A DNA stretch of 64,000 nucleotides from Dimorphilus gyrociliatus. Lineage: Eukaryota > Animalia > Annelida. A program made the position numbers and the translations under genes. Position 1 is the stretch's first letter, and the number at the start of each line of letters is the position of its first letter. The notes under the pieces were generated by a model that had not been told where the DNA came from, did not search any database, and saw only the letters and a list, made by a program, of their open reading frames with translations. Below are positions 3 to 11,721 of the stretch, one piece after another. Where the stretch lies: contig CAJFCJ010000003.1 in NCBI GenBank assembly GCA_904063045.1, forward strand, positions 1,860,001-1,924,000, read 5' to 3'.

Positions 3-3000
3 CTAGTCAGTGGTCAATATAATCCAGAAGAAAAAACTAAAGGAAGAAGTATTACAAAAAATGGAATTGAAGACAAACAAAGAAAATTTACTGAAACAGT
101 TGCTCCGGAAATGAGATATGAAACTCCTAAACCCCCTTTGTCCCAGTCAAAGTAAGTAAAAGTTATGCTAAAATATATTTTATGACCTTTTTATTATATA
201 GGGACAGTAAAATGAAACCAGAAAAAGGATTTGTTTTTCATGCTAAAACTTCGCATTCAACGGCTCCTACTGTCCCAGAAAAAGAAAAACCAAAAGTCGT
301 TGTGAAGTTACCAAAGCCTATGTCCAGGGATGCTTCAATTGTTAAGGAAGAAGAGTTTTCGCAAAAAGATGCAATTGAAAGATCACAGACTATGGTGTAT
401 GAGCACAAAAAACGTATTCCAACAGCGAGGTTGAAAACGGCTATTAAGCGATCAAAAACGCTGCTAAATTTCAGAGAGTTTTGGAAACAAGTCGCTATGA
501 AAACCAAGAAAGAAAATAAAATTCTGCCATACACAGCAACTGATGCAGCTGACATATACTTGGCAGCATTAGAAGCGGCTACGACTAAACTTATGAGAGA
601 AGATGAATCTAATAAACAAGATATACTTCCTTATGAAGACCCTTTGAGGACTGTCCCACCCTGGCACAGGAAGGAATATGTATTAAATGAGAGAGAGATT
701 GATATGTATAATCACCTAAAGGTAATATATGGTGACAAGACAACGATGTTGAAAAGATGTCGTCAACAAGAGTTTTATGAGAAGTTAGAAAAATTACAAC
801 AGGAAGAGACTAAAAAATATAATTCATTACTTAAGGACAAGAAGAAACAAAGAGAGAAATCAAAATTAAAGCAGCAGCAACAATTAAAATTTGTTCGCAA
901 TAAATTTGAGGAAGAGCAAGTTAATCGTTTTCGAAATCAGTATGTAACAACAAGAATTTTACAGCATGAATGGACTACTAGACATATATACGGTCTTCCT
1001 GAGGATCTGGGAGATGATACTGCTACATCTAGAGTTAAAAGAAAAGTGGAAAGAGCTAAGGAGATACCAGATGATCTTAGGGAGCAAAATATTCGAAGAT
1101 TTAGAGGACTATTCGATGTTCATTGTGGTTTGGCACTAGCAAATATGAAGCCACCAAAATTTGGTAGGTTGTTTTAGAGCTTGTCAGAGCACTAACGAAA
1201 AAAACGATCTATACTCTATCGTCATTCATTCGATATTTACATAAACTCTTTGCAAGAAACTGAACAATCCTCTTAAATTGAACTATTTGCTAGGCAACAA
1301 GTAGGCCTATTCGATATAGTCGCTTTTATAATAACTTAGTCAATTATATTTTTTATCAAAATGTTCTTTACTAAATACAGGTAAAAAATCAAAGAAGCTA
1401 CCAACAGATGATGTTGTGAGAGACGCTAGGAAAATGTTAGATGAAACAAGCGAAGACGAGGATTCAACAGACAATGAGGACGAATCATATTCTAACGGGG
1501 CTGATAACAAACTTACAGCAAATCGATCATACTCCAATAAAAAATATAGTAAAAACCCTAGTCGTCAAACATATCTTTCTCCCTATTATTCTACTTTAAG
1601 AAAACCTCAATCAAGGAGAATGACTGAATCTCTTGATAAAGAAAACAAAAAACCTAAAAAAACTATAGAAACCAAACCAAAGTTTAAACTTGACATGAAA
1701 TCGAATGCTAATAACTATAAAAAGTCGTTTAAACCAATAAATGATTTGACCAAGATTGAGGTTTCAAATTCATCTAACAAAGCACCGGATAAGAAAAAGA
1801 ATGTAAAATTCGTTAAACCAAATACTCACTCCAATCAAAGAATAAATAACAGAGGAAAAATTTCAGAACGATCAAAAATGAAAGATCAAAATAATTCACC
1901 AAGCGATGAAGATAGTAAAGTTGAAGAAAACAACGAGAGCACTGAAAATACGAAAACAGCTGATTCTAGACAATTAACCCCTGAGCTGAAACAGGATATA
2001 GCACAAGGTCATGATCCTACTCCAGTTCAATCAGCATCTACTCTCAGAGGAGAGCTTAACACAAATGAAACAAAGGTAGAGTCCATACCTTATATATCAG
2101 AGACATCATCTGCAAGTCCAGCGTCAAACGTTATCCAGAATGAGTCGCCACCTACGAATGAACAACAGCAGAAGAATGAGGAAATAGATCCAAATCAACT
2201 TGATAGAAATGCCACTGAAGCAAATAACCTAAGCTACAGCGATCCTAAGGAAGGATCGGCTAAATCTAAAAGGGAGAATTCAGAAGAAAAGTCCGAACAG
2301 GAAAATAATTCGGAGAATACTGCAAGTGAAGGAAACAGTTTGTTTAATTCAAAAAGTCCTAAAGGAGAGAATAAGATACCTGAGACTGAAAAGAGTAGTA
2401 ATCAGAATCCTAATCCTGATACAACAGACCAATCCGTCACTCAAGCTGAAGCAGATAATGAGGAAAAGTCAACACCTACTGAAGAGTATACAAACACAAA
2501 TGACGAAAAGTTTGAAAAAGAAGTTTTAAGACCCACTTCTTCCCACTCTAAAGATCAAGAGTCTTATAAAGAGCAACCAATAATCGCTGATAAAACTGGT
2601 GAACCATTTGAACGTCAATCTAACAAGCTTTCACTAAAGGAGCCAATTGAGAAACCTGATGAATATCCTGAAAGTCAAGAAACAGACGACCTTAAAAAGA
2701 AAGACTTGAAATCAGCTGCTATAAAACCTAAGAAGGAGAAAAAAAATATAAGCTCTGCTGATAGTAGGAAACCCAAAAAGAATTCTGAAAAAGTTAAAAA
2801 AGAAGAAAAAAGCCCAACTAAGCTTCCAGATAAGAAACAAAACGAAACAAAGGGTCTAACTAAAAATATGAACGCTCATGATCCCAAACCATCGCTATCT
2901 TCCAAAGAAAAACACAAATTCCAGAAACCAGCAAATAGTTCTCACCAAGAAAGAACTAAAGATTCTAAGTTAAAAAAATTACCTTCTAGAGAAAACACTA

Positions 3001-3152
3001 AAGAACCCATAATTCTTCCGAAAAAGGATATGGATGGCGATCGAGTCGAGCTTGATTCTCTCGACTTAGGTTATAGTGATGAGGAAACAGAAGACATATT
3101 TGAGCGAGCGAAAAAGAAATACGGAATTCAAATAGACAGTGATGATGACTAA
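3..3152 (+). CDS. Uncharacterised protein, 5'-partial: basic/coiled-coil N-terminal part plus long S/E/K/N-rich low-complexity C-terminal part; exons about 3-151, 202-1163, 1381-3152
   Basis: Open frame from base 3. GTAAGT donor at 152 with AG at 200-201. The GTAGGT donor at 1164 and TACAG acceptor at 1380 are both phase 1 and join track ORFs 182..1177 and 1416..3152 in frame (KPPKF-G-KKSKKLPTDD). Confidence 0.7.
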
Positions 3153-3187
3153 GGCTTAAATTTCATTTTGTTTTTATTTTAATGGAT

Positions 3188-4075
3188 TTAATTGTTCATT
3201 TGATATCTTATTAAGGTGTAATATATTTCTTTTAAAGCCTCTTGAGCATTCATTGAAATACCAAAGTGACCGTTTGGAACCTCATACTCGTCCAAGTTTA
3301 TTCGGACAATTTTAACTCGATTCTTAAACGTTTTTACCAATTGCTCTGTGATTAATCTTACAGGTTTCGTATGACCATTTAAAGATCCTGACGCTCCAAT
3401 TTCCAATATAGTTATTTTATCATCCTGTTTTACCAAATCAATGTATTCTTCAAATTTATTTTTTTGTTGAGAGACTCTCTTCAACGAAAAGTTGTTTTCC
3501 TCATAAAGAACAATATTTGGACGTGCTGGCATCATATTTAATCCAACGGGATATGGCTCACAAGCAAGTAGAGTAGATAACTCGTACTTCGGAATATTTA
3601 AATGATCAAAAGGCCAGACATCATCTCCGTCTTTTTTATTCAGATATTGCAAGAAGCCAATGTTACCGTTCGGTTCATATATTTTGTTTTCATCAAATCC
3701 TGCTTTAAAAAAATGACCATCTATATTTGTTGTATAAATGAAAAAGTTATTATTTTTTAAAAGACAAATTTCTCTTAAATAATTGAAACCACTGTGAGGC
3801 TCAGTTGAACTATACATTGTATATCGATGTGCATAATATCCCCAGCACAGCGAAGGATTCTTCGTAAATAAATTATAGTTACTCATTTCTGGCACATAAT
3901 AATTCCAAGGTTTTAACTGTGGATAAAAATTCCAAAAATCTTTGGGAGTTCTGAAAAGGTCTAGTCCACTATCCGCACTTATACCTGCACCAGCTCCTAT
4001 AAATACAACCTGACTTTGGTGAATCCAACTGCAGGCATTGAAAAGTAATTTCTCTTGTTCTTCGACTTCTTCCAT
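3188..4075 (-). CDS. Sir2-family (sirtuin) protein, bacterial-like subfamily, intronless, degenerate active site (295 aa)
   Basis: GAGAGISADSG..FR NAD-binding loop, WGYYAHR...PHSGF, TTNIDG, RPNIVLY, EIGAS and RIN motifs. First ATG at 4075; the track starts at an upstream TTG. Confidence 0.9.
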   Translation of the reverse strand: MEEVEEQEKLLFNACSWIHQSQVVFIGAGAGISADSGLDLFRTPKDFWNFYPQLKPWNYYVPEMSNYNLFTKNPSLCWGYYAHRYTMYSSTEPHSGFNYLREICLLKNNNFFIYTTNIDGHFFKAGFDENKIYEPNGNIGFLQYLNKKDGDDVWPFDHLNIPKYELSTLLACEPYPVGLNMMPARPNIVLYEENNFSLKRVSQQKNKFEEYIDLVKQDDKITILEIGASGSLNGHTKPVRLITEQLVKTFKNRVKIVRINLDEYEVPNGHFGISMNAQEALKEIYYTLIRYQMNN

Positions 4076-4267
4076 TTTAAGAACTAAATATCTGTTCAAA
4101 CATCAAGTTTAAGTTCAAGATATCGGTTGTGTAGGCCTAGGTAATTGTTTTAAATTAAATCTATTTATAGGTAACAATACATCCACAGATTCATTTGATA
4201 TACGTCATAAGTAGCTTGTATTAAGAATTTTAAGATAACAAAGATTTTCAATTCAGTCCGGAACTGG

Positions 4268-6172
4268 TTATAGCTTTTCAACAGCTTCTATTTCCGAGAT
4301 CATTGCTTTCACACCATTCCATATTTCATTAGAGCTAAGTTCAATTGCTTCTTTTCCGGGATTGAACCCTGGACCTCTAAGTTCTGGTGTGTATGTATAT
4401 TTGATATTCACTACTGCCTTAACATAATCACTTGTACTTCCAGAGGTAGGATCTGAGAAAATAAAATTATAAAGCAGGATTATATTTCCACAAATAATGC
4501 TCACAAATTTCTTCACAGGAATTCCCTCTCGTCCATAGTGTATCATAGGTGTTTTCTATAGCATCAGCAAATGCGTTAGCTACTCGGTACTAACAAAATT
4601 ATTAACAATCATTTGAATTAATAAATTTGAATTTTAAACCATATCTTTACAAACCAAGTCATCGTGATCTTCAGCTCTCACACAAATTCCATTTTCTGTA
4701 TGACCAAACGGATGCAAAATTATTTGAGCCGCTGTATGGATAGAGGTCCAAACAATAACGGAATCACCCACACGTTGAGCGTAGTTCTAACATTAATTTG
4801 CAATTTTGATTACACGATATAATAGTAAATTAGCACTGCCAACCTGGAGAGCTTGAGTTTCTACTTCACTTGCTGCTGAGCTTCCTCCATAAGTCTCTGA
4901 ACAAGGATTAGTGGAAGTTCCATCAGCTTTTGATAAATAAAGTAAATAAGTTTTGTAATAAAAATGGGAATTAAAAGATAAAAAAACTCACTGCCCCAGT
5001 TGACATCAAAATTACGGTTTAAATCAGTTCCAATGCAAAAGCTACCGGCATTTGGACTTCTGTTTTTTCTCCAAAACCTCTATTTTTAAATAGTGTGAAA
5101 ACCTTATTGAATAATATTTTAGATAAACTTTTCATACATCAACTTCCCATGAGTATACATATCCATCAGGGTTATGAATAATTAAAAAATGAAAATCATA
5201 TTTATTGAGCAAGTTTATGGCATCTTGAGTGTCTTGCTTTAGAATCTTAAAAAGAGAAAGTTTAAAAATGTGTAAATGAAGTCAAAACTTACGTACAGCC
5301 TCTAATAGTTTTAAATTCGTGGCTGGCGCTAGCCATTCTCTGGCATGAATGGCAGAATCGAAAAATACAATCTTCCTATTGGCACCTGATTTACTTATCT
5401 GTAAATATATAAGTGAATTTTTGAAAAAGAGAGAGCAGATAGAGAGATATTATCTACTTTAAAAACTCTCAATGGTCTTCCTTCAGTAGAGCTTCCTATA
5501 TTTTCTATATTACAAGATGCTCCTGATGGGCAGCTCCCAACAAAGTCATCTAACCCTTGATTTATGTCCTCAAAGGAATTATAATCATTGATATCAAAGG
5601 CTTTTCTGATAAATTTGCATCGAGATACACAATTTATGATATATGTTATAACCTGTACTACTTCGGTGGCTTTTATAAAAATTTAGCTATACATACTTTT
5701 TGCTCAACCGCTTCCACATTTCTTGAAGATGGCTGCGCAAAAAATCTTATATTAATTTCCATCAATTGTAAATATATTGTAAAGGTACCGTTCCACATTA
5801 TCATATAGAATGTCTATAGAGAGATTAATGGAATCAAAAGCAGTTTTAGTAAAAATATATTGTTGAGGATTCAAAAGCATGATAGCTTGTCTCCCTTCCT
5901 TGGTTGCTGGTTGTAAGAAATCAACCTAAAAGAAAAAATAAGCTAGACTATTAAATATCTTACAGCATTAAAAGTTACTAACATTCTGATCCTTTAGGTG
6001 GTTTAGCCATTGTAAGTGCTCGCTATTTTCAGGAAAAGCCTTTACAATCTTATAACTAGAAAATAAAAGTCATTAGCCATTGACTGAAGTTTTATGAAAA
6101 TTACCCTTCGAAGGTTTTCCTCTCCAAAGCGAGAGAGGACGATAAAACAATTAAAGCAATTAAAAGTCTCAT
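4268..6172 (-). CDS. Secreted zinc carboxypeptidase A/B-like (M14A) preproenzyme, multi-exon
   Basis: Signal peptide [15 protein letters not shown], propeptide, zinc motif IHAREW, NPDGY, WRKNR, DLNRNF, and C-terminal [16 protein letters not shown]. Confidence 0.9.
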
Positions 6173-7507
6173 TGTTAATTAGCTAATTAAATAATTTCCT
6201 TTATATAAATATATAAAATGTTAAAGAATGCAAGATGCTTATTCACATCCTAAATTTCGAAACTGTAAGATAAAAATATAAGAAAAATGACTGTCTAAAT
6301 TTCAGTTTTTAAAATATCTTCATTAAAGAGTTATTGCTTTATCGTACTCCTTTTACTTTATCATTCACTGTGTGAATCAAACTGTGCTATTTAGCAGGTG
6401 TTTTGAATTTCATTGGATATTTGCTAAACAACTCGAATTTACTATCAATAAATAGCGCAGGGACGTAAGACTTACTAGTAAATAATACTGAAACAGTTTT
6501 AGAATAATTATAAATATCAAACTAATATTATGGTTTTAGTCAATCAATTGTTCATAACTATCGTACGTTATGGATTTAAACTATTAAGACTTATAATTGT
6601 CATAGTAAGAAAGCTCAATGTAACTATGTGACAAGATATAAATTAGCATGTCATTTACATCGTTGTAAGTCAGTTTAAAAAGAGCAATCAGTAATTATTA
6701 TTTAGTAAATAAACAAAACGTCGCTAATAAGATAAGAAAGCTTTCTTATTGAATATATAATAGGTCGTAGGGCTTAAATAAATAATGCAAACATAGAAGG
6801 CCTATATCTGTAGCATAATAACTGGTATCTAAAATAACACTAGTTATTATTGGATAAAGGCAGACGCATTTGAAATCCTTAATAGTTCATCCAATGAAGT
6901 TGATTTTGCCAACAAAAAATTACAAATTTTTTTATTAGATTATAAATAGTCTAACGAAAAATTTCTTTTCAGTATTTAACACGTTTCAAGTCATATTTAG
7001 AATCCATTCTGAATGTATGAGTGAGTTTTTTTTGCCATCTAGTGGATATACAGAACAAGTGCACATATTTCTATGAGATTAGTTCGCTCTAGTGTATTGT
7101 TGAGAATTATCGTTTAGTATTTTGTAATTTATCGAAAATATAGTTTAAATCAATTTTTTGTCAAAGAAAAGGTAATGATTTTTCTGCTTTATTTCATGTT
7201 TATATTATCGACAGAAATAATGGAAACGGCAGAAAGTAACGTAAATTGAAATCAAAGTATATAACAATAGTTATTTTCGTGTTATTCTTTAATATCTAAT
7301 CGTTATAAAGTTACCAAATTCTTTCCAGAAAGGTTTATTATAATTTTTATACGGATAGGGAAAGTTGCGCTATAAATCAATAAAGTCTACAGGGCGCTTT
7401 TTCTTACCCGGCTAGATGTCGCTGTTTGTTATTATTGATGAAGTGGTATATGATGCGAACTCGGCAGTTATTATTATAACGTCGTCCAAAGGAAGAGCAA
7501 CTTGAAT

Positions 7508-10500
7508 ATGGCGAACAAGACAACGTCGGAAGAGTGTTTAGCAAATAGAAACTGGTATGCGTTTCTCTGCTCTTCATTAATCACATTTCTAGTCGGACTA
7601 TTCCTTGTCTTAACATGGAGAATATTTTCTTGGCTTTGTCGTAATACAAGGTCATCAACTAACAAGACAAAATTACAATCACAAAAAGCTAATGGAGAAA
7701 ATGGGAGAGCTGGTACCAAAGACTCCACCCGGACGGCTGTGATCCAATCAGCAATCGATACGGAAATTGGTTGGGTAACAGAGGCCAAAGATTGGGCTGG
7801 GGAGTTAATTTCTGGCCAAACGACAACCGGCCGGATTTTGGTCGTTCTAGTCTTTCTACTCAGTATTGCATCGCTCATTATTTATTTTATCGACGCTTCT
7901 ACGTGAGTGTGAATTTTCACTAATCCGAATGTCCTAAAAATTAAATCGTGAATCGACACGAGCTAAATAGATTTTGTACATTCATTAATACGTTTTATTA
8001 ACTTCTGCTATTTCATCGCGCAGTTTAGAATTAATATCTATATACTTGCTGTTTTGAAAAAGAAAGGTTTTGTGTTTGTGTAAGGTGGCTCGAAAGGGAA
8101 TAAGATGCGCAAAAACTTTTTATTTAAGCAATATTAGTGGGTGCAATAGAAGCTATTAATTTATTTCAAGTTAAATATATACTAGCGGTTGAAAAACTGA
8201 AAGTGATTGATCCAAAAGAGATCTATTGATCAGTTGTATTGTATATTGTATCGATTATATGGATTGATGATATAGGCTTAAATTTGTACTTTATAAACAG
8301 AGAACAAGTGGAATCATGCGAAAAATGGTCTCAATCGACTACCCAACAAGTCGACCTAGCTTTTAACATCTTTTTTATGATATATTTTTTCATCCGTCTA
8401 GTCGCAGCCCCTGATAAACTCTGGTTTCTTGTTGAAATTTATTCATTTGTGGATTACTTTACCATTCCACCTTCATTCGTTGCAATCTATTTAAATCGAA
8501 ATTGGTTGGGACTTCGCTTTACTAGAGTTCTTCGAATGATGTCCATTCCAGATGTGTTACAATACTTGAACATCCTCAAGACCTCAAATTCTATAAGACT
8601 ATCTCAACTGTTATCTATGCTCATATCTGTATGGTTTACAGGGGCAGGTTTTGTTCATTTGGTTGAAAATTCTGGGGACCCCTTCTTTAATTTTAGTAAC
8701 GCACAGTCTCTTACTTACTGGGAATGCGTGTATTTCACTTTAGTGACAATGAGCACTGTTGGATACGGAGATATATATTGTAAAACGGTTTTTGGAAGAT
8801 TGTTTATGGTTTTCTTTATTCTGGTTGCATTGGTAAGTCAATTTTATTAATTATTTTGTCATTTTTGAGAATATACTTAATTTCCGTTTCACCAATAATT
8901 TTATCAATCTTATTCTAATAACTTCCATAGTTTGATAACATATACGATTTCTATCTAAGTCTACTAAAGTTAAAACCAAATATATTTAAAAAATTTTTAA
9001 TTTGAGTTTAAAAGACAATTTAATGATTCGCACTTGGAGGAGTGTCGATAACCTATCCCATAACTTAATATTTTGTGAATCGCTTTGTAATTAAATTACT
9101 ATTTCAATAACCCTCTTTTAATTATTTGACACTTGTCTTATTTTTTAGGCAATTTTTGCGTCCTTTGTGCCAGGTAAATATTTTGAAATACTTCAAATAT
9201 ATTGTATGTAATTTTTTAACTGAGATTTTTTCTAACAGAGATTGTTGAAATTTTGGGCAATCGAACAAGATATTCTGGAACGTATAGAAAAGAGCAAGGG
9301 AAAAGGTCTGTAATAAATACATGATATAGTCGAAATTGTTCAAAATTTATTGGAAAGACAAAATATTATATTCTTTTAGCAAGTTCCTTTGCCCTTAACT
9401 TTTAGTTCAAACTACATGCTTGATTGTGGAATAAATTTATATGTATTAAAATAATGTTACGTTTTGATCAAATTAATTTAGAACCAATTAATTTTCATTC
9501 TTATACTAATTAAGCTTATTTACAGACACATTGTACTCTGTGGTCACATAACATATGAGTCGGTATCAAATTTTATGTCCGACTTTCTTCACAAAGATAG
9601 AGAAGATGTTGATGTTGAGTTGGTTATTATGCATCGGAAGGAACCAGATCTCGAATTGGAAGGACTTTTTAAACGTCATTTTACTCAGGTTGAGTTTTTT
9701 CATGGTTCAGTTATGGATGCCAATGATTTGGAAAGAGTGTCTGTGAAAACAGCTGATGCATGTTTAGTTCTAGCCAATAAGTACTGCGAAGATCCTGATT
9801 CAGAAGATGCAGCCAATATTATGAGAGTCATATCAATTAAAAATTACCACGACGAAATCAAGGTCATAATCCAACTACTTCAGTACCACAACAAAGCATA
9901 TCTTTTAAACATTCCATCTTGGGATTGGAAAAGAGGTGATGACGCTGTCTGTCTTGCAGAATTGAAGCTTGGGTTTATAGCCCAGTCGGCACTAGCACCT
10001 GGATTTTCCACTTTAATGGCTAACTTATTTACAATGAGAGCTTATAAATCAGGAACAGAAATGGCACTCTGGCACAATGACTATTTACGTGGTACAGGAA
10101 TGGAAATGTATACAGAATATTTATCAAATGCGTTTGTAGGTTTATCCTTCCCTGAAGCTGCTGAACTATGCTTTTCAAAGCTAAAGCTGCTCTTAATAGC
10201 AATAGAGGCAAGAAGTCCATCTCCTTCCAATTCTTCACAGGAAAATACCATAGAGTCTTGTATTGCAATAAATCCGGGAGCCAATGTGATAATTGAAACT
10301 CATACCCAAGGATTTTTCATAGCCGAAAGTGCCGATGAAGTTAAAAGAGCATGTTTTTTCTGCGCTCGCTGTCATGCAGATGTCTTAGATGAAAGAGCTA
10401 TAAAAAAATGCTATTGTAAAGCACCCGCACCCGTAAATCCTGTTAAAGGCGATATTGGACACCCAAAGCCCCTAATAAATTTACCAGAGACGTCCAAGGA

Positions 10501-11721
10501 AGAGACAGTAACGGATTCTTCAGCGTTTGATTCAACAGGAATGTTTCACTGGTGTCAGGAACAAAGTTTAAGCAGCTGTATAGTCGAGAGGGAGCAGGCA
10601 GCTTCTCACGTTCTTCATAATCATATCGCAGTCTGTTTGTTTGCAGATGCATCCTCTCCTCTAATTGGATTGCGAAATTTAATTATGCCTTTACGTGCGT
10701 CTAATTTCCAGTATAATGAATTAAAGCATGTTGTCCTAGTGGGAGATAAAGATTTTATAAGAAAAGAATGGAAAACCCTTTGTAACTTTCCAAAGTTAAC
10801 GGTATTAGATGGATCACCCTTAAATCGTGCTAATTTAAGGGCTGTGAATATTAACTTAGTGGATATGTGTGTCATACTCAGCGCAAGAAGACCGTCCAAT
10901 TTAGATGATACAAGTCTTGTTGATAAAGAAGCAATTTTATGCAGCTTAAACATTAAAGCTATGATGTTTGACGATGCCGCAACGACCAGTATAGCTGCTC
11001 AAGTTTGTCAGAACCCAAATTCTCAAAAAATTTTTACTCGTGGTTCGGATATTCCAATGATTACAGAATTAGGAAACGATGCTAATGTTCAGTTTCTTGA
11101 TCAGGACGACGATGATGATCCTGACATTGAATTGTACATGACCCAACCCTTTGCTTGTGGCAATGCTTTTGCTGTTTCTGTGTTAGACTCACTCATGTCA
11201 ACAACCTATTTTAATGATAACGCTCTCACACTCATAAGAACATTAATAACAGGAGGAGCAACTCCAGAATTGGAACAAATTTTAGCCGAAGGTGTCGGAA
11301 TGAGGGGCGGTTGTTTGTCAAGTCAAACTCTAGCTAACCGACATAGGTGTCGCGTAGCACAATTAGCTCTTTACGACGGTCCACTAGCCAGATTTGGTGA
11401 CAGCAGATATGGAGAGTTATTCTCTTTTGCCCTAAGAAATTACAATATTCTTTGCATAGGATTATATCGACTAAGAGATCCACAACAAGTTGATTCAACT
11501 AAGCGTTATGTTATATCAAACCCTCCATTTCATTTCCTTCTGATACCCTCTGATAAGGTTAGTCATAATATTTAACAAAACTTTTGGTTTCTCTGGTCGT
11601 TTTTGAGATTGACCTAAATGGCTTCTTTACTATCATTTATTAGCTGTTCTGTTTCGCTCCAAGTCACGTTGTTGCGGATACGGGATATAGTGGAACCCGT
11701 AAGGTTTTATGTTGTAACTAG
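7508..11721 (+). CDS. slo: Calcium-activated BK potassium channel alpha subunit (slowpoke); exons 7508-7902, 8301-8832, 9149-9173, 9239-9305, 9526-11557, 11644-11721
   Basis: S0-S6 helices, pore STVGYGD, RCK1 HIVLCGHIT and calcium bowl QDDDDDPD. All five junctions are GT-AG and phase-compatible. Confidence 0.97.

What the first reader, a model, noticed from the sequence alone, without database searches (positions are those of the whole stretch)
3188..4075. Sirtuin with the catalytic His replaced by Asn and the zinc-ribbon cysteines lost
Seen: the NAD-binding motifs are intact (GAGAGISADSG, FR, TNID, GAS, RIN), but the usual HG reads EPNG. The small domain (LQYLNKK...LACEPYP) has only one Cys instead of CxxC...CxxC. 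Known: this His is the general base for deacylation and its mutation kills Sir2/SIRT1; class M sirtuins naturally carry Gln there and act as ADP-ribosyltransferases. Inference: a non-deacylating animal sirtuin (ADP-ribosyltransferase, NADase or NAD sensor) kept as a full 295-aa frame. This is the best candidate for undescribed biochemistry in the window.
Basis: partly seen in the sequence, partly recalled or inferred. Interest (0 to 1): 0.8.

Follow-up and report, generated by a model that had tools for sequence, protein, structure and literature searches.

The report
Worm sirtuin lacking its catalytic histidine
A small marine worm keeps and transcribes a sirtuin gene whose NAD pocket looks intact but whose essential catalytic histidine is an asparagine, so it probably no longer removes acyl groups; it belongs to a zinc-free animal sirtuin family that the main survey of animal sirtuins set aside as probable contamination.

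Summary
Window 3188-4075 (minus strand) is an intact, single-exon, 295-aa Sir2-fold gene (AF2 pLDDT 96). It reads E-P-N-G where sirtuins read HG, and none of the four zinc-ligand positions is Cys.

The interpretation needs correcting on three points.
- **Not class M.** SirTM's Gln137, Arg192, GVGx[NT]TP motif and macrodomain link are all absent.
- **Family.** It belongs to a large unnamed His-bearing family of bacteria, protists and invertebrates. This is the clade Gold & Sinclair 2022 excluded as "probable contaminants/HGT"; two accessions match exactly (Capitella ELT91158.1, Clytia TCONS_00049926).
- **Zinc loss is older than the worm.** The animal members examined all lack the zinc cysteines but keep His. 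His→Asn is seen only in this worm and a sister species.

The gene is real and constrained. Synteny is conserved. dN is about 0.27 against saturated dS. The two species agree at 91% of family-conserved columns against 54% elsewhere. RNA-derived contigs cover the whole ORF.

Best reading: a non-deacylating sirtuin that still binds NAD and probably still cleaves it (ADP-ribosyl transfer). A catalytically dead NAD/acyl-lysine binder is a close rival. The biochemistry is untested.

The scan had already noted this same stretch as possible HGT (s1-084450); my data argue against recent transfer.

The parts
3188..4075 (-). Single-exon CDS of the 295-aa sirtuin (P0001), stop at 3188-3190
   Evidence: ORF list and translation. 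Pfam SIR2 31.3 bits. AF2 pLDDT 96.2, pTM 0.93. An unspliced RNA-derived contig covers 2462-4288.
3668..3670 (-). Codon AAC for Asn136, in the column of the sirtuin catalytic His (motif E-P-N-G-N, 3662-3676)
   Evidence: Alignments: His in 97% of the family. The PDB profile alignment puts SirTM Gln and Af1 His in this column. The sister species uses AAT.
3950..3997 (-). Rossmann GAGAG motif and cofactor-binding loop (GAGAGISADSGLDLFR). F41 and R42 are kept. The loop is altered to FRTxxDF, against FRGxxGFW in the family.
   Evidence: The [FY]RTxxDF form is shared only with the Tigriopus, P0009 and Liolophura proteins among 355 relatives.
3719..3733 (-). TTNID motif with Asn117 and Asp119 (nicotinamide pocket), both retained
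   Evidence: The equivalent Asn118 is required for SpySirTM activity (PMC4518038).
3524..3649 (-). Small-domain module (residues 143-184) that carries the Cys4 zinc site in other sirtuins. Here 0 of 4 ligand columns are Cys; the only Cys is C172, off-site.
   Evidence: Alignments. The module is modelled with pLDDT 84-98 without zinc.
3506..3523 (-). RPNIVL, the canonical sirtuin RPN[IV]V motif. Val189 sits in the column of SirTM Arg192.
   Evidence: Profile-to-5a3a alignment with numbering offset worked out..
3389..3397 (-). GAS (family GAG), the pyrophosphate/ribose-binding loop
3296..3304 (-). RIN motif; Asn260 is equivalent to the Asn that binds the adenine ribose
   Evidence: Asn258 plays this role in SpySirTM.
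4076..4267 (-). 192-nt spacer between the stop of the upstream M14 carboxypeptidase gene and the sirtuin ATG. Presumed to hold the promoter and 5' UTR.
   Evidence: The sister species has no carboxypeptidase ORF upstream of its sirtuin.

Best explanation
This is a fast-evolving, lineage-specific derivative of an unnamed, zinc-free animal sirtuin family.

Shown:
- It has a confident Sir2 fold.
- It keeps the residues that hold NAD and the nicotinamide pocket: GAGAG, S36, F41, R42, N117, D119, GAS and N260.
- The general-base His is Asn in this worm and in its sister species.
- The gene is transcribed and under purifying selection.

Inferred: the protein still binds NAD. It can still perform the His-independent first step of sirtuin chemistry, which is nicotinamide release with transfer of ADP-ribose to an acceptor or acyl-lysine oxygen. 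It cannot efficiently complete deacylation, which needs the His to activate the ribose hydroxyl. Its most likely activity is therefore NAD-dependent ADP-ribosyl transfer, or NAD-dependent trapping of an acylated partner, rather than deacylation. Asn136 would only position the ribose 3'-OH, as Gln137 does in SirTM.
For: Identity and fold.

His to Asn at the catalytic column. The change is shared by both species with different codons, AAC and AAT.

NAD-pocket residues are retained among the 51 of 67 family-conserved columns that the protein keeps.

Constraint:
- dN 0.24-0.29 against dS 0.9-3.4, with identity at codon positions 1/2/3 of 0.73/0.80/0.50.
- The two worm proteins are identical at 61 of 67 family-conserved columns against 122 of 227 other columns, Fisher p = 4e-9.
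- Both frames remain open in 33%-GC DNA.

Genuine animal locus: synteny is conserved, with the Slo/BK channel on one side and a convergent low-complexity gene on the other.

Transcription: X2 contigs are spliced at neighbouring genes and cover 2462-4288 unbroken. An independent marine metatranscriptome (X1) holds contigs about 95% identical at 3424-3692 and 3699-3994.

Precedent: SirTM works without His, by positioning the ribose with an amide side chain (PMC4518038).

Recurrence: Asn is the most frequent non-His residue at this column in the family, also seen in Euplotes, P0050/P0174 and P0111.
Against: No biochemical data exist.

SirTM needs Arg192 alongside Gln137. The equivalent residue here is Val189, and no macrodomain eraser is nearby.

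Asn is one methylene shorter than Gln and may not reach the 3'-OH. I had no model coordinates to check this.

The cofactor loop has four non-conservative changes (P39D, D40L, G43T, G46D) that could impair NAD binding. However, the His-bearing copepod protein shows changes at the same four columns, and the chiton protein shares the RTxxDF form.

The protein is among the most divergent 5% of its family, on a stem branch of 2.4 substitutions per site. This would also fit a release from catalytic constraint.

The RNA evidence is contig-level and unstranded. The ORF lies downstream of a highly expressed same-strand gene, and its 3' end abuts a convergent gene.
Confidence: 0.45

Rival explanations
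1. It is a catalytically dead pseudoenzyme. The protein keeps the fold and the NAD/ADP-ribose or acyl-lysine pocket only for binding. It would act as an NAD sensor, a reader of acylated lysines, or a regulator or decoy of another sirtuin.
For: The general base is lost. Sirtuin NADase activity also depends on that His (PMC12700824), and SirTM's helper Arg is absent. Divergence is strongly accelerated, with only 48-51 of 67 conserved columns kept against a family median of 65. Purifying selection since the species split is equally expected for a binding protein.
Against: Residues needed for chemistry rather than mere binding are all kept: Asn117, Asp119 and the F41-R42 pair. By contrast, another Asn variant in the family (P0050/P0174) has also lost N117 and D119, so a fully dead version looks different from this one.
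Confidence: 0.3
2. It is still a slow or specialised lysine deacylase. Another group would substitute for the His as base: a water, the substrate, or a neighbouring residue such as N138.
For: The canonical substrate-side motif RPNIVLYEE is retained, as is the rest of the active site. From general knowledge of sirtuin mechanism, not tested here, mutants of the catalytic His in canonical sirtuins keep residual nicotinamide cleavage.
Against: His is kept in 97% of 279 family members and in every characterised deacylating sirtuin class (PMC4518038). No worm-specific His appears in the aligned active-site motifs. The His residues shared by both worm proteins in those motifs (H94, H121) are also present in His-bearing relatives.
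Confidence: 0.15
3. It is a class M sirtuin (SirTM), or a recent bacterial gene transfer or contaminant.
For: The best PDB matches by sequence and by fold are SirTM structures 8rsn and 5a3a. The gene is intronless among intron-bearing neighbours. Many relatives are bacterial.
Against: The SirTM hallmarks Gln137, Arg192, GVGx[NT]TP and macrodomain linkage are all absent.

The family occurs on chromosome-scale scaffolds of a cnidarian, a nemertean, a chiton, a copepod and an annelid. The Hydractinia copy has introns.

The worm gene shares the zinc-free LPxGP form with the animal members. It shares the [FY]RTxxDF loop only with copepod and chiton proteins.

Holding all animals together gives a tree 1.84 log-likelihood units better than the free search (p-AU 0.55). 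Synteny is conserved in a second species.
Confidence: 0.03
4. It is a decaying pseudogene or a chance or misassembled ORF.
For: It sits on a long branch and has lost a key residue.
Against: The frame is open in two species despite saturated synonymous divergence. Third codon positions are much more diverged than second positions. Chance of an open frame is about 1e-10. Independent RNA contigs confirm the sequence. The fold is modelled at pLDDT 96.
Confidence: 0.02

Closest known systems
Unnamed zinc-free animal sirtuin clade. Members: Capitella teleta ELT91158.1, Clytia hemisphaerica TCONS_00049926 / XP_066920041.1, Hydractinia, Lingula LOC106159559, Lineus XP_064637700.1, Paralvinella LSH36_26g11033, Liolophura XP_064611738.1, Tigriopus TCAL_15426. 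Databases annotate them only as 'NAD-dependent protein deacylase-like' or as uncharacterised.
   Same: Same family by sequence (E down to 1e-52, 31-37% identity). Same length and architecture. Same replacement of the second zinc pair, LPxGP for LPxCPxCG. The cofactor-loop form [FY]RTxxDF is shared specifically with the copepod and chiton members. Animal monophyly including the worm is not rejected.
   Different: The members examined carry the catalytic His (ECHGS or ExHG). The worm pair has Asn, and Asn again at +2 (EPNGN). The worm pair is also about four to five times more diverged.
Class M sirtuins (SirTM: SpySirTM 5a3a, Fusarium Mfs1 8rsn), which are protein ADP-ribosyltransferases
   Same: Best structural and profile match in the PDB. 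An amide side chain replaces the catalytic His. The Asn of the TNxD motif is kept.
   Different: Asn rather than Gln. Val189 sits in the column of Arg192. There is no GVGx[NT]TP motif, no zinc site, and no macrodomain fusion or neighbour. The immediate relatives are His-bearing, so the change is convergent rather than inherited.
Class III / archaeal sirtuins (SIRT5, CobB, Sir2-Af1), which are NAD-dependent deacylases
   Same: Next-best sequence and fold matches. The best NCBIfam hits are the PRK00481/CobB models, though far below their cut-offs (62 bits against 243). The RPN[IV]V motif is retained.
   Different: No catalytic His and no Cys4 zinc site. A longer helical insert in the small domain resembles SirTM.
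Non-canonical SIR2_2 sirtuins (vertebrate FAM118A/B, bacterial ThsA), which are NADases without a zinc module
   Same: Animal sirtuin-fold proteins that lack the zinc module and are not thought to deacylate (PMC12700824).
   Different: They belong to a different subfamily (Pfam SIR2_2 rather than SIR2) with a seven-stranded sheet. FAM118 needs its active-site His (H206A abolishes NAD processing) and that paper reports the His as important for ThsA; the worm protein lacks it.

Membership tests
Sir2/sirtuin superfamily (Pfam PF02146) | Rossmann large domain plus small domain; profile match above the gathering score | tested here: met
   31.3 bits against a cut-off of 24. AF2 pLDDT 96.2. The Foldseek matches listed are all sirtuins, at probability 1.00.
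Sir2/sirtuin superfamily (Pfam PF02146) | NAD-binding motifs: GAGxS, FR, (T/S)xN(I/V)D, G(A/T)(G/S), N near the C-terminus | tested here: met
   All are present at the aligned columns.
Catalytically canonical sirtuin deacylases (classes I-IV, U) | General-base His in the xHG motif | tested here: not met
   Asn136 in both worm species.
Catalytically canonical sirtuin deacylases (classes I-IV, U) | Cys4 zinc site in the small domain | tested here: not met
   0 of 4 ligand columns are Cys.
Catalytically canonical sirtuin deacylases (classes I-IV, U) | NAD-dependent lysine deacylation activity | not testable with these tools
   Requires an enzyme assay.
Class M sirtuins (SirTM) | Absolutely conserved Gln in place of the catalytic His (Gln137 in SpySirTM) | tested here: not met
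   The residue is Asn, not Gln.
Class M sirtuins (SirTM) | Conserved Arg192 contacting Gln137 | tested here: not met
   The aligned column is Val189, within RPNIVL (alignment).
Class M sirtuins (SirTM) | Class-specific GVGx[NT]TP pyrophosphate loop | tested here: not met
   The loop reads EIGASGSLNG here.
Class M sirtuins (SirTM) | Genetic linkage or fusion to a zinc macrodomain | tested here: not met
   The neighbours are an M14 carboxypeptidase, a low-complexity protein and a Slo/BK channel. The same neighbours, minus the carboxypeptidase, occur in the sister species. Only the window was searched, not the whole genome.
Unnamed zinc-free animal sirtuin clade (Capitella ELT91158.1 type) | Family-level sequence similarity over the full length | tested here: met
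   E = 1e-36 to 1e-52 over residues 13-285. Scores 415 bits to the A2 profile, which includes the query itself.
Unnamed zinc-free animal sirtuin clade (Capitella ELT91158.1 type) | LPxGP(P)G in place of LPxCPxCG, with the first Cys pair lost or partly lost | tested here: met
   YPVGLNM in the window protein and FPEGPRM in the sister species sit in those columns.
Unnamed zinc-free animal sirtuin clade (Capitella ELT91158.1 type) | Phylogenetic placement inside the animal clade | tested here: inconclusive
   The free tree places the worm pair in a weakly supported long-branch cluster with the copepod and chiton rows and with two further long-branch rows of unknown origin, P0050 and P0026 (88/74). 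Constraining all animals together is not worse (lnL +1.84, p-AU 0.55). A worm+copepod+chiton clade is not rejected (p-AU 0.49).
Unnamed zinc-free animal sirtuin clade (Capitella ELT91158.1 type) | E-C/x-H-G-S catalytic motif | tested here: not met
   The motif is EPNGN.

The most novel reading that the evidence does not exclude
This would be the first metazoan sirtuin that has naturally given up the catalytic His and, convergently with bacterial and fungal SirTM, become a dedicated NAD-dependent ADP-ribosyltransferase or an NAD-gated trap for acyl-lysine substrates, using Asn. It would have arisen inside a tenth, zinc-independent animal sirtuin family that has gone unrecognised because it was filtered out as contamination.
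Probability: 0.25. Interest if true: 0.75.

Novelty: new variant of a known kind. Interest (0 to 1): 0.55.

Why it matters
Deacylating sirtuins, and the sirtuin NADases discussed here, depend on the active-site His. SirTM is the only class described as working without it, and it has not been reported in animals. A selectively maintained, expressed animal sirtuin with Asn at that site is a natural experiment on what a sirtuin fold does once deacylation is switched off. Its close His-bearing relatives in a chiton and a copepod are ready-made controls.

The parent family also matters. It shows that a Sir2 small domain can apparently fold without its zinc site across cnidarians and protostomes. 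It also shows that the clade removed as "probable contaminants/HGT" in the reference survey of animal sirtuins (PMC9486876) is a genuine animal gene family. That would raise the ancestral animal sirtuin repertoire.

Tried and rejected
- **Word-index protein search with the single protein.** It found only the sister-species orthologue and two weak SirTM-like hits, which wrongly suggested an orphan. The exhaustive search found 2157 relatives.
- **SirTM membership.** Suggested by the top PDB hit. Rejected after aligning the diagnostic residues.
- **Recent HGT or contamination.** Rejected on synteny, animal distribution, introns in Hydractinia and the AU test.
- **First 144-row quick tree.** Almost unresolved, with 12 of 141 branches supported. 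The worm pair's exact sister could not be fixed because of long branches.
- **YN00 dN/dS.** Failed because synonymous sites are saturated, so only an upper-level statement (dN much lower than dS) is possible.
- **Literature search** for natural Asn variants or sirtuin pseudoenzymes gave nothing specific. The acetic-acid-bacteria "novel group" paper could not be related to this family.
- **Search of the scan's own notes** for other sirtuin or macrodomain findings in this genome was blank.

Not done:
- I could not measure distances in the AF2 model because no coordinates are returned. The statement that no other His reaches the site rests on alignment only.
- I could not search the rest of the genome for a His-bearing paralogue.

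Full report
**1. The observation**

The minus strand of the window carries an open frame from 4099 to 3188. From the ATG at 4075 it encodes 295 residues, with the stop at 3188-3190. For random sequence of this window's composition (about 33% GC) a stop is expected every 13-14 codons. The chance of 295 stop-free codons is about 1.4e-10.

- GAGAGISADSG at 3965-3997
- FR at 3950-3955
- TTNID at 3719-3733
- EPNGN at 3662-3676
- GAS at 3389-3397
- RIN at 3296-3304

Pfam SIR2 matches above its gathering score, 31.3 bits against 24. The NCBIfam deacylase models match only far below their cut-offs. AlphaFold2 with a 72-sequence alignment gives a confident sirtuin fold, mean pLDDT 96.2 and pTM 0.93. 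The zinc-less small-domain segment is modelled at pLDDT 84-98.

**2. It is a real animal gene**

A protein 62-64% identical (P0002) is encoded in a Logan assembly of another organism. The gene order there is the same: Slo/BK potassium channel, then the sirtuin, then a convergent low-complexity gene of about 600 aa. That third gene has a nearly identical acidic C-terminal motif in both species, and its stop lies 29-35 nt from the sirtuin's stop.

I did not verify the taxon. The 51-91-nt introns and tight gene spacing fit a compact animal genome.

**3. Transcription**

Run X2 is labelled of unknown kind, but it is evidently RNA-derived. Its contigs skip the introns of the neighbouring genes at GT..AG or CT..AC boundaries. 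One X2 contig covers 2462-4288 without a gap or a single mismatch. That span is the whole sirtuin ORF plus both flanks.

An independent marine metatranscriptome (X1) holds contigs about 95% identical over 3424-3692 and 3699-3994. Of the seven listed X1 differences inside the ORF, four are synonymous third-position changes.

Caveats:
- The evidence is at contig level and unstranded.
- The ORF lies 192 nt downstream of a highly expressed same-strand M14 carboxypeptidase gene.
- The ORF abuts a convergent gene.

The sister species has no carboxypeptidase ORF upstream of its sirtuin. Conservation of the sirtuin therefore does not depend on that neighbour.

**4. Selection**

Between the two species dN is 0.24-0.29 and dS is 0.9-3.4, which is saturated. 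Identity at codon positions 1/2/3 is 0.73/0.80/0.50.

At the 67 alignment columns that are at least 85% conserved across 279 relatives, the two worm proteins agree at 61 (91%). At the other 227 columns they agree at 122 (54%); Fisher p = 4e-9. The ancestral pattern of site-wise constraint, centred on the NAD pocket, is therefore still acting after the loss of His.

**5. Which sirtuin it is**

The single-sequence PDB search ranks the SirTM domain of Fusarium Mfs1 (8rsn) first. A family profile and the fold search also rank SirTM structures 8rsn and 5a3a narrowly above Sir2-Af1 and SIRT5.

The protein is nevertheless not class M. Using the 5a3a alignment and its 10-residue numbering offset, SirTM's Gln137 column holds Asn136 and its Arg192 column holds Val189. 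Val189 lies within a canonical RPNIVL motif. [quoted passage not shown]

The exhaustive search found 2157 relatives, the best at only about 35% identity. Of the 288 relatives aligned, 276 carry His at the catalytic column in an E-x-H-G-S-I-x-x-L-Q-C motif.

This family spans:
- bacteria (Chlorobi, Planctomycetota, Persephonella and others);
- protists (Physarum, Platysulcus, Euplotes, Nonionella);
- invertebrates: Liolophura, Lingula, Paralvinella, Capitella, Lineus, Tigriopus, Hydractinia, Clytia, Sanderia and Rhopilema.

They are not contaminants. Several members lie on large scaffolds: Liolophura 37 Mb, Lineus 29 Mb, Tigriopus 18 Mb, Hydractinia 37 Mb, Clytia 1.8 Mb and Paralvinella 1.7 Mb. 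The Hydractinia gene spans 3.2 kb for 285 codons, so it has introns. It has a tandem duplicate and sits beside DZIP1.

**6. The zinc site**

In the animal members examined the second Cys pair is replaced: most read LPxGPPG where bacterial members read LPxCPxCG, and the Liolophura row is altered differently. The first pair is lost or reduced to one Cys. The worm proteins fit this pattern (YPVGLNM and FPEGPRM).

Zinc loss is therefore ancestral to the animal clade and coexists with the catalytic His everywhere else. It is a separate and older event than His→Asn.

**7. The His→Asn change**

Asn occurs in the window protein (AAC) and its sister (AAT). Elsewhere in the family the column is non-His only sporadically: Asn in Euplotes, P0050/P0174 and P0111; Arg twice; Phe once.

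P0050/P0174 has also lost N117 and D119, and so looks truly dead. The worm proteins keep both.

The worm pair retains 51 and 48 of the 67 conserved columns, against a family median of 65 and a 5th percentile of 50. The shared derived changes cluster in two places:
- the cofactor loop: P39D, D40L, G43T, G46D;
- around the catalytic motif: H136N and S138N.

The loop form [FY]RTxxDF is found, among 355 proteins, only in the worm pair, the copepod pair (Tigriopus and P0009) and the chiton. This defines a divergent protostome subtype within which only the worm lineage lost His.

**8. Phylogeny**

The worm pair sits on a stem of about 2.4 substitutions per site. In the free tree it joins a weakly supported long-branch cluster with the copepod and chiton rows and two further long-branch rows of unknown origin, P0050 and P0026.

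Forcing all animal sequences together gives a slightly better likelihood (+1.84, p-AU 0.55). A worm+copepod+chiton clade is not rejected (p-AU 0.49).

Vertical descent within animals followed by strong acceleration is the simplest reading.

**9. Mechanism**

The following rests on established sirtuin chemistry. The first step is nicotinamide release with attack on C1' of the ribose; it needs the nicotinamide pocket (Asn/Asp of TNxD, and the FR loop) but not the His. The His then activates the ribose hydroxyl to resolve the alkylamidate intermediate, which completes deacylation.

SirTM shows that an amide side chain at this site supports dedicated protein ADP-ribosylation, and that restoring His there abolishes it (PMC4518038). 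The sirtuin NADase FAM118 loses its NAD-processing activity when its active-site His is mutated, and that paper reports the equivalent His as important for ThsA (PMC12700824).

The worm protein keeps everything needed for the first step and lacks the base for the second. My estimates for the alternatives are:

| Reading | Confidence |
|---|---|
| Non-deacylating, NAD-binding sirtuin that transfers ADP-ribose or stalls on its acylated partner | about 0.45 |
| Pure NAD/acyl-lysine-binding pseudoenzyme | about 0.3 |
| Slow or specialised deacylase | about 0.15 |

What is shown: the fold, the residue pattern, purifying selection, and contig-level evidence of transcription. What is inferred: NAD binding and any chemistry.

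**10. Verdict**

The class M analogy is convergent at best, and the zinc loss belongs to the whole animal family.

The finding is a new variant of a known kind. The parent family is a worthwhile by-product: an unrecognised, zinc-free animal sirtuin clade. 

Noticed in passing
Loci L006, L007, L008; proteins P0313, P0317, P0356, P0315, P0186, P0180, P0204: The sirtuin clade that Gold & Sinclair 2022 excluded as probable contaminants/HGT is a genuine animal family without the Cys4 zinc site. Two accessions match exactly: Capitella ELT91158.1 and Clytia TCONS_00049926. Members lie on chromosome-scale scaffolds. The Hydractinia copy has introns and a tandem duplicate (L008 6001-9209 and 10715-14244).
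   Followed up: partly
window 4259-6050 (-): An M14 zinc carboxypeptidase gene with about eleven very short introns (51-91 nt, CT..AC on the plus strand). Its contig depth in the RNA-derived run X2 is very high (about 3670). No carboxypeptidase ORF was seen at the syntenic position in the sister species (L001 6500-8000).
   Followed up: partly
window 182-3152 (+); L001 8957-10819 (-): A low-complexity Ser/Asn/Lys/Glu-rich gene with no Pfam match and one intron (1163-1379). It is convergent with the sirtuin, and the two stop codons are only 35 nt apart, so the 3' UTRs must overlap. Its C-terminal motif DSLDLGYSDEETEDIFERAK.KYGIQ is almost identical in the sister species, while the rest is poorly conserved.
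   Followed up: no
window 7502-11575 (+): Slo/BK calcium-activated potassium channel exons (Ion_trans, BK_channel_a, Slo-like RCK, Slowpoke_C). The gene is syntenic with the sister species.
   Followed up: no
proteins P0005, P0200, P0205, P0211, P0219 (about 520 aa); P0007, P0236, P0250, P0278 (about 365 aa): Metagenomic members of the same family occur in two extended forms of about 520 aa and about 365 aa. Checked examples: P0005 has two SIR2 matches and lies beside an HNH/DUF7225 gene; the ~365-aa proteins carry an N-terminal HTH (HTH_11/DeoR) domain. The other ~520-aa proteins are assumed alike from length only. None appears to be characterised.
   Followed up: no
proteins P0050/P0174, P0058 (Euplotes crassus), P0111: Asn appears at the catalytic His column in other branches of the family as well. 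P0050/P0174 has additionally lost the TNxD Asn and Asp. The Euplotes protein keeps them, along with its zinc cysteines.
   Followed up: partly
run X1 laid on window 1658-6054: A 2025 marine metatranscriptome contains spliced transcripts 90-95% identical to three adjacent genes of this window. A close relative of the worm was therefore alive in that sample.
   Followed up: no
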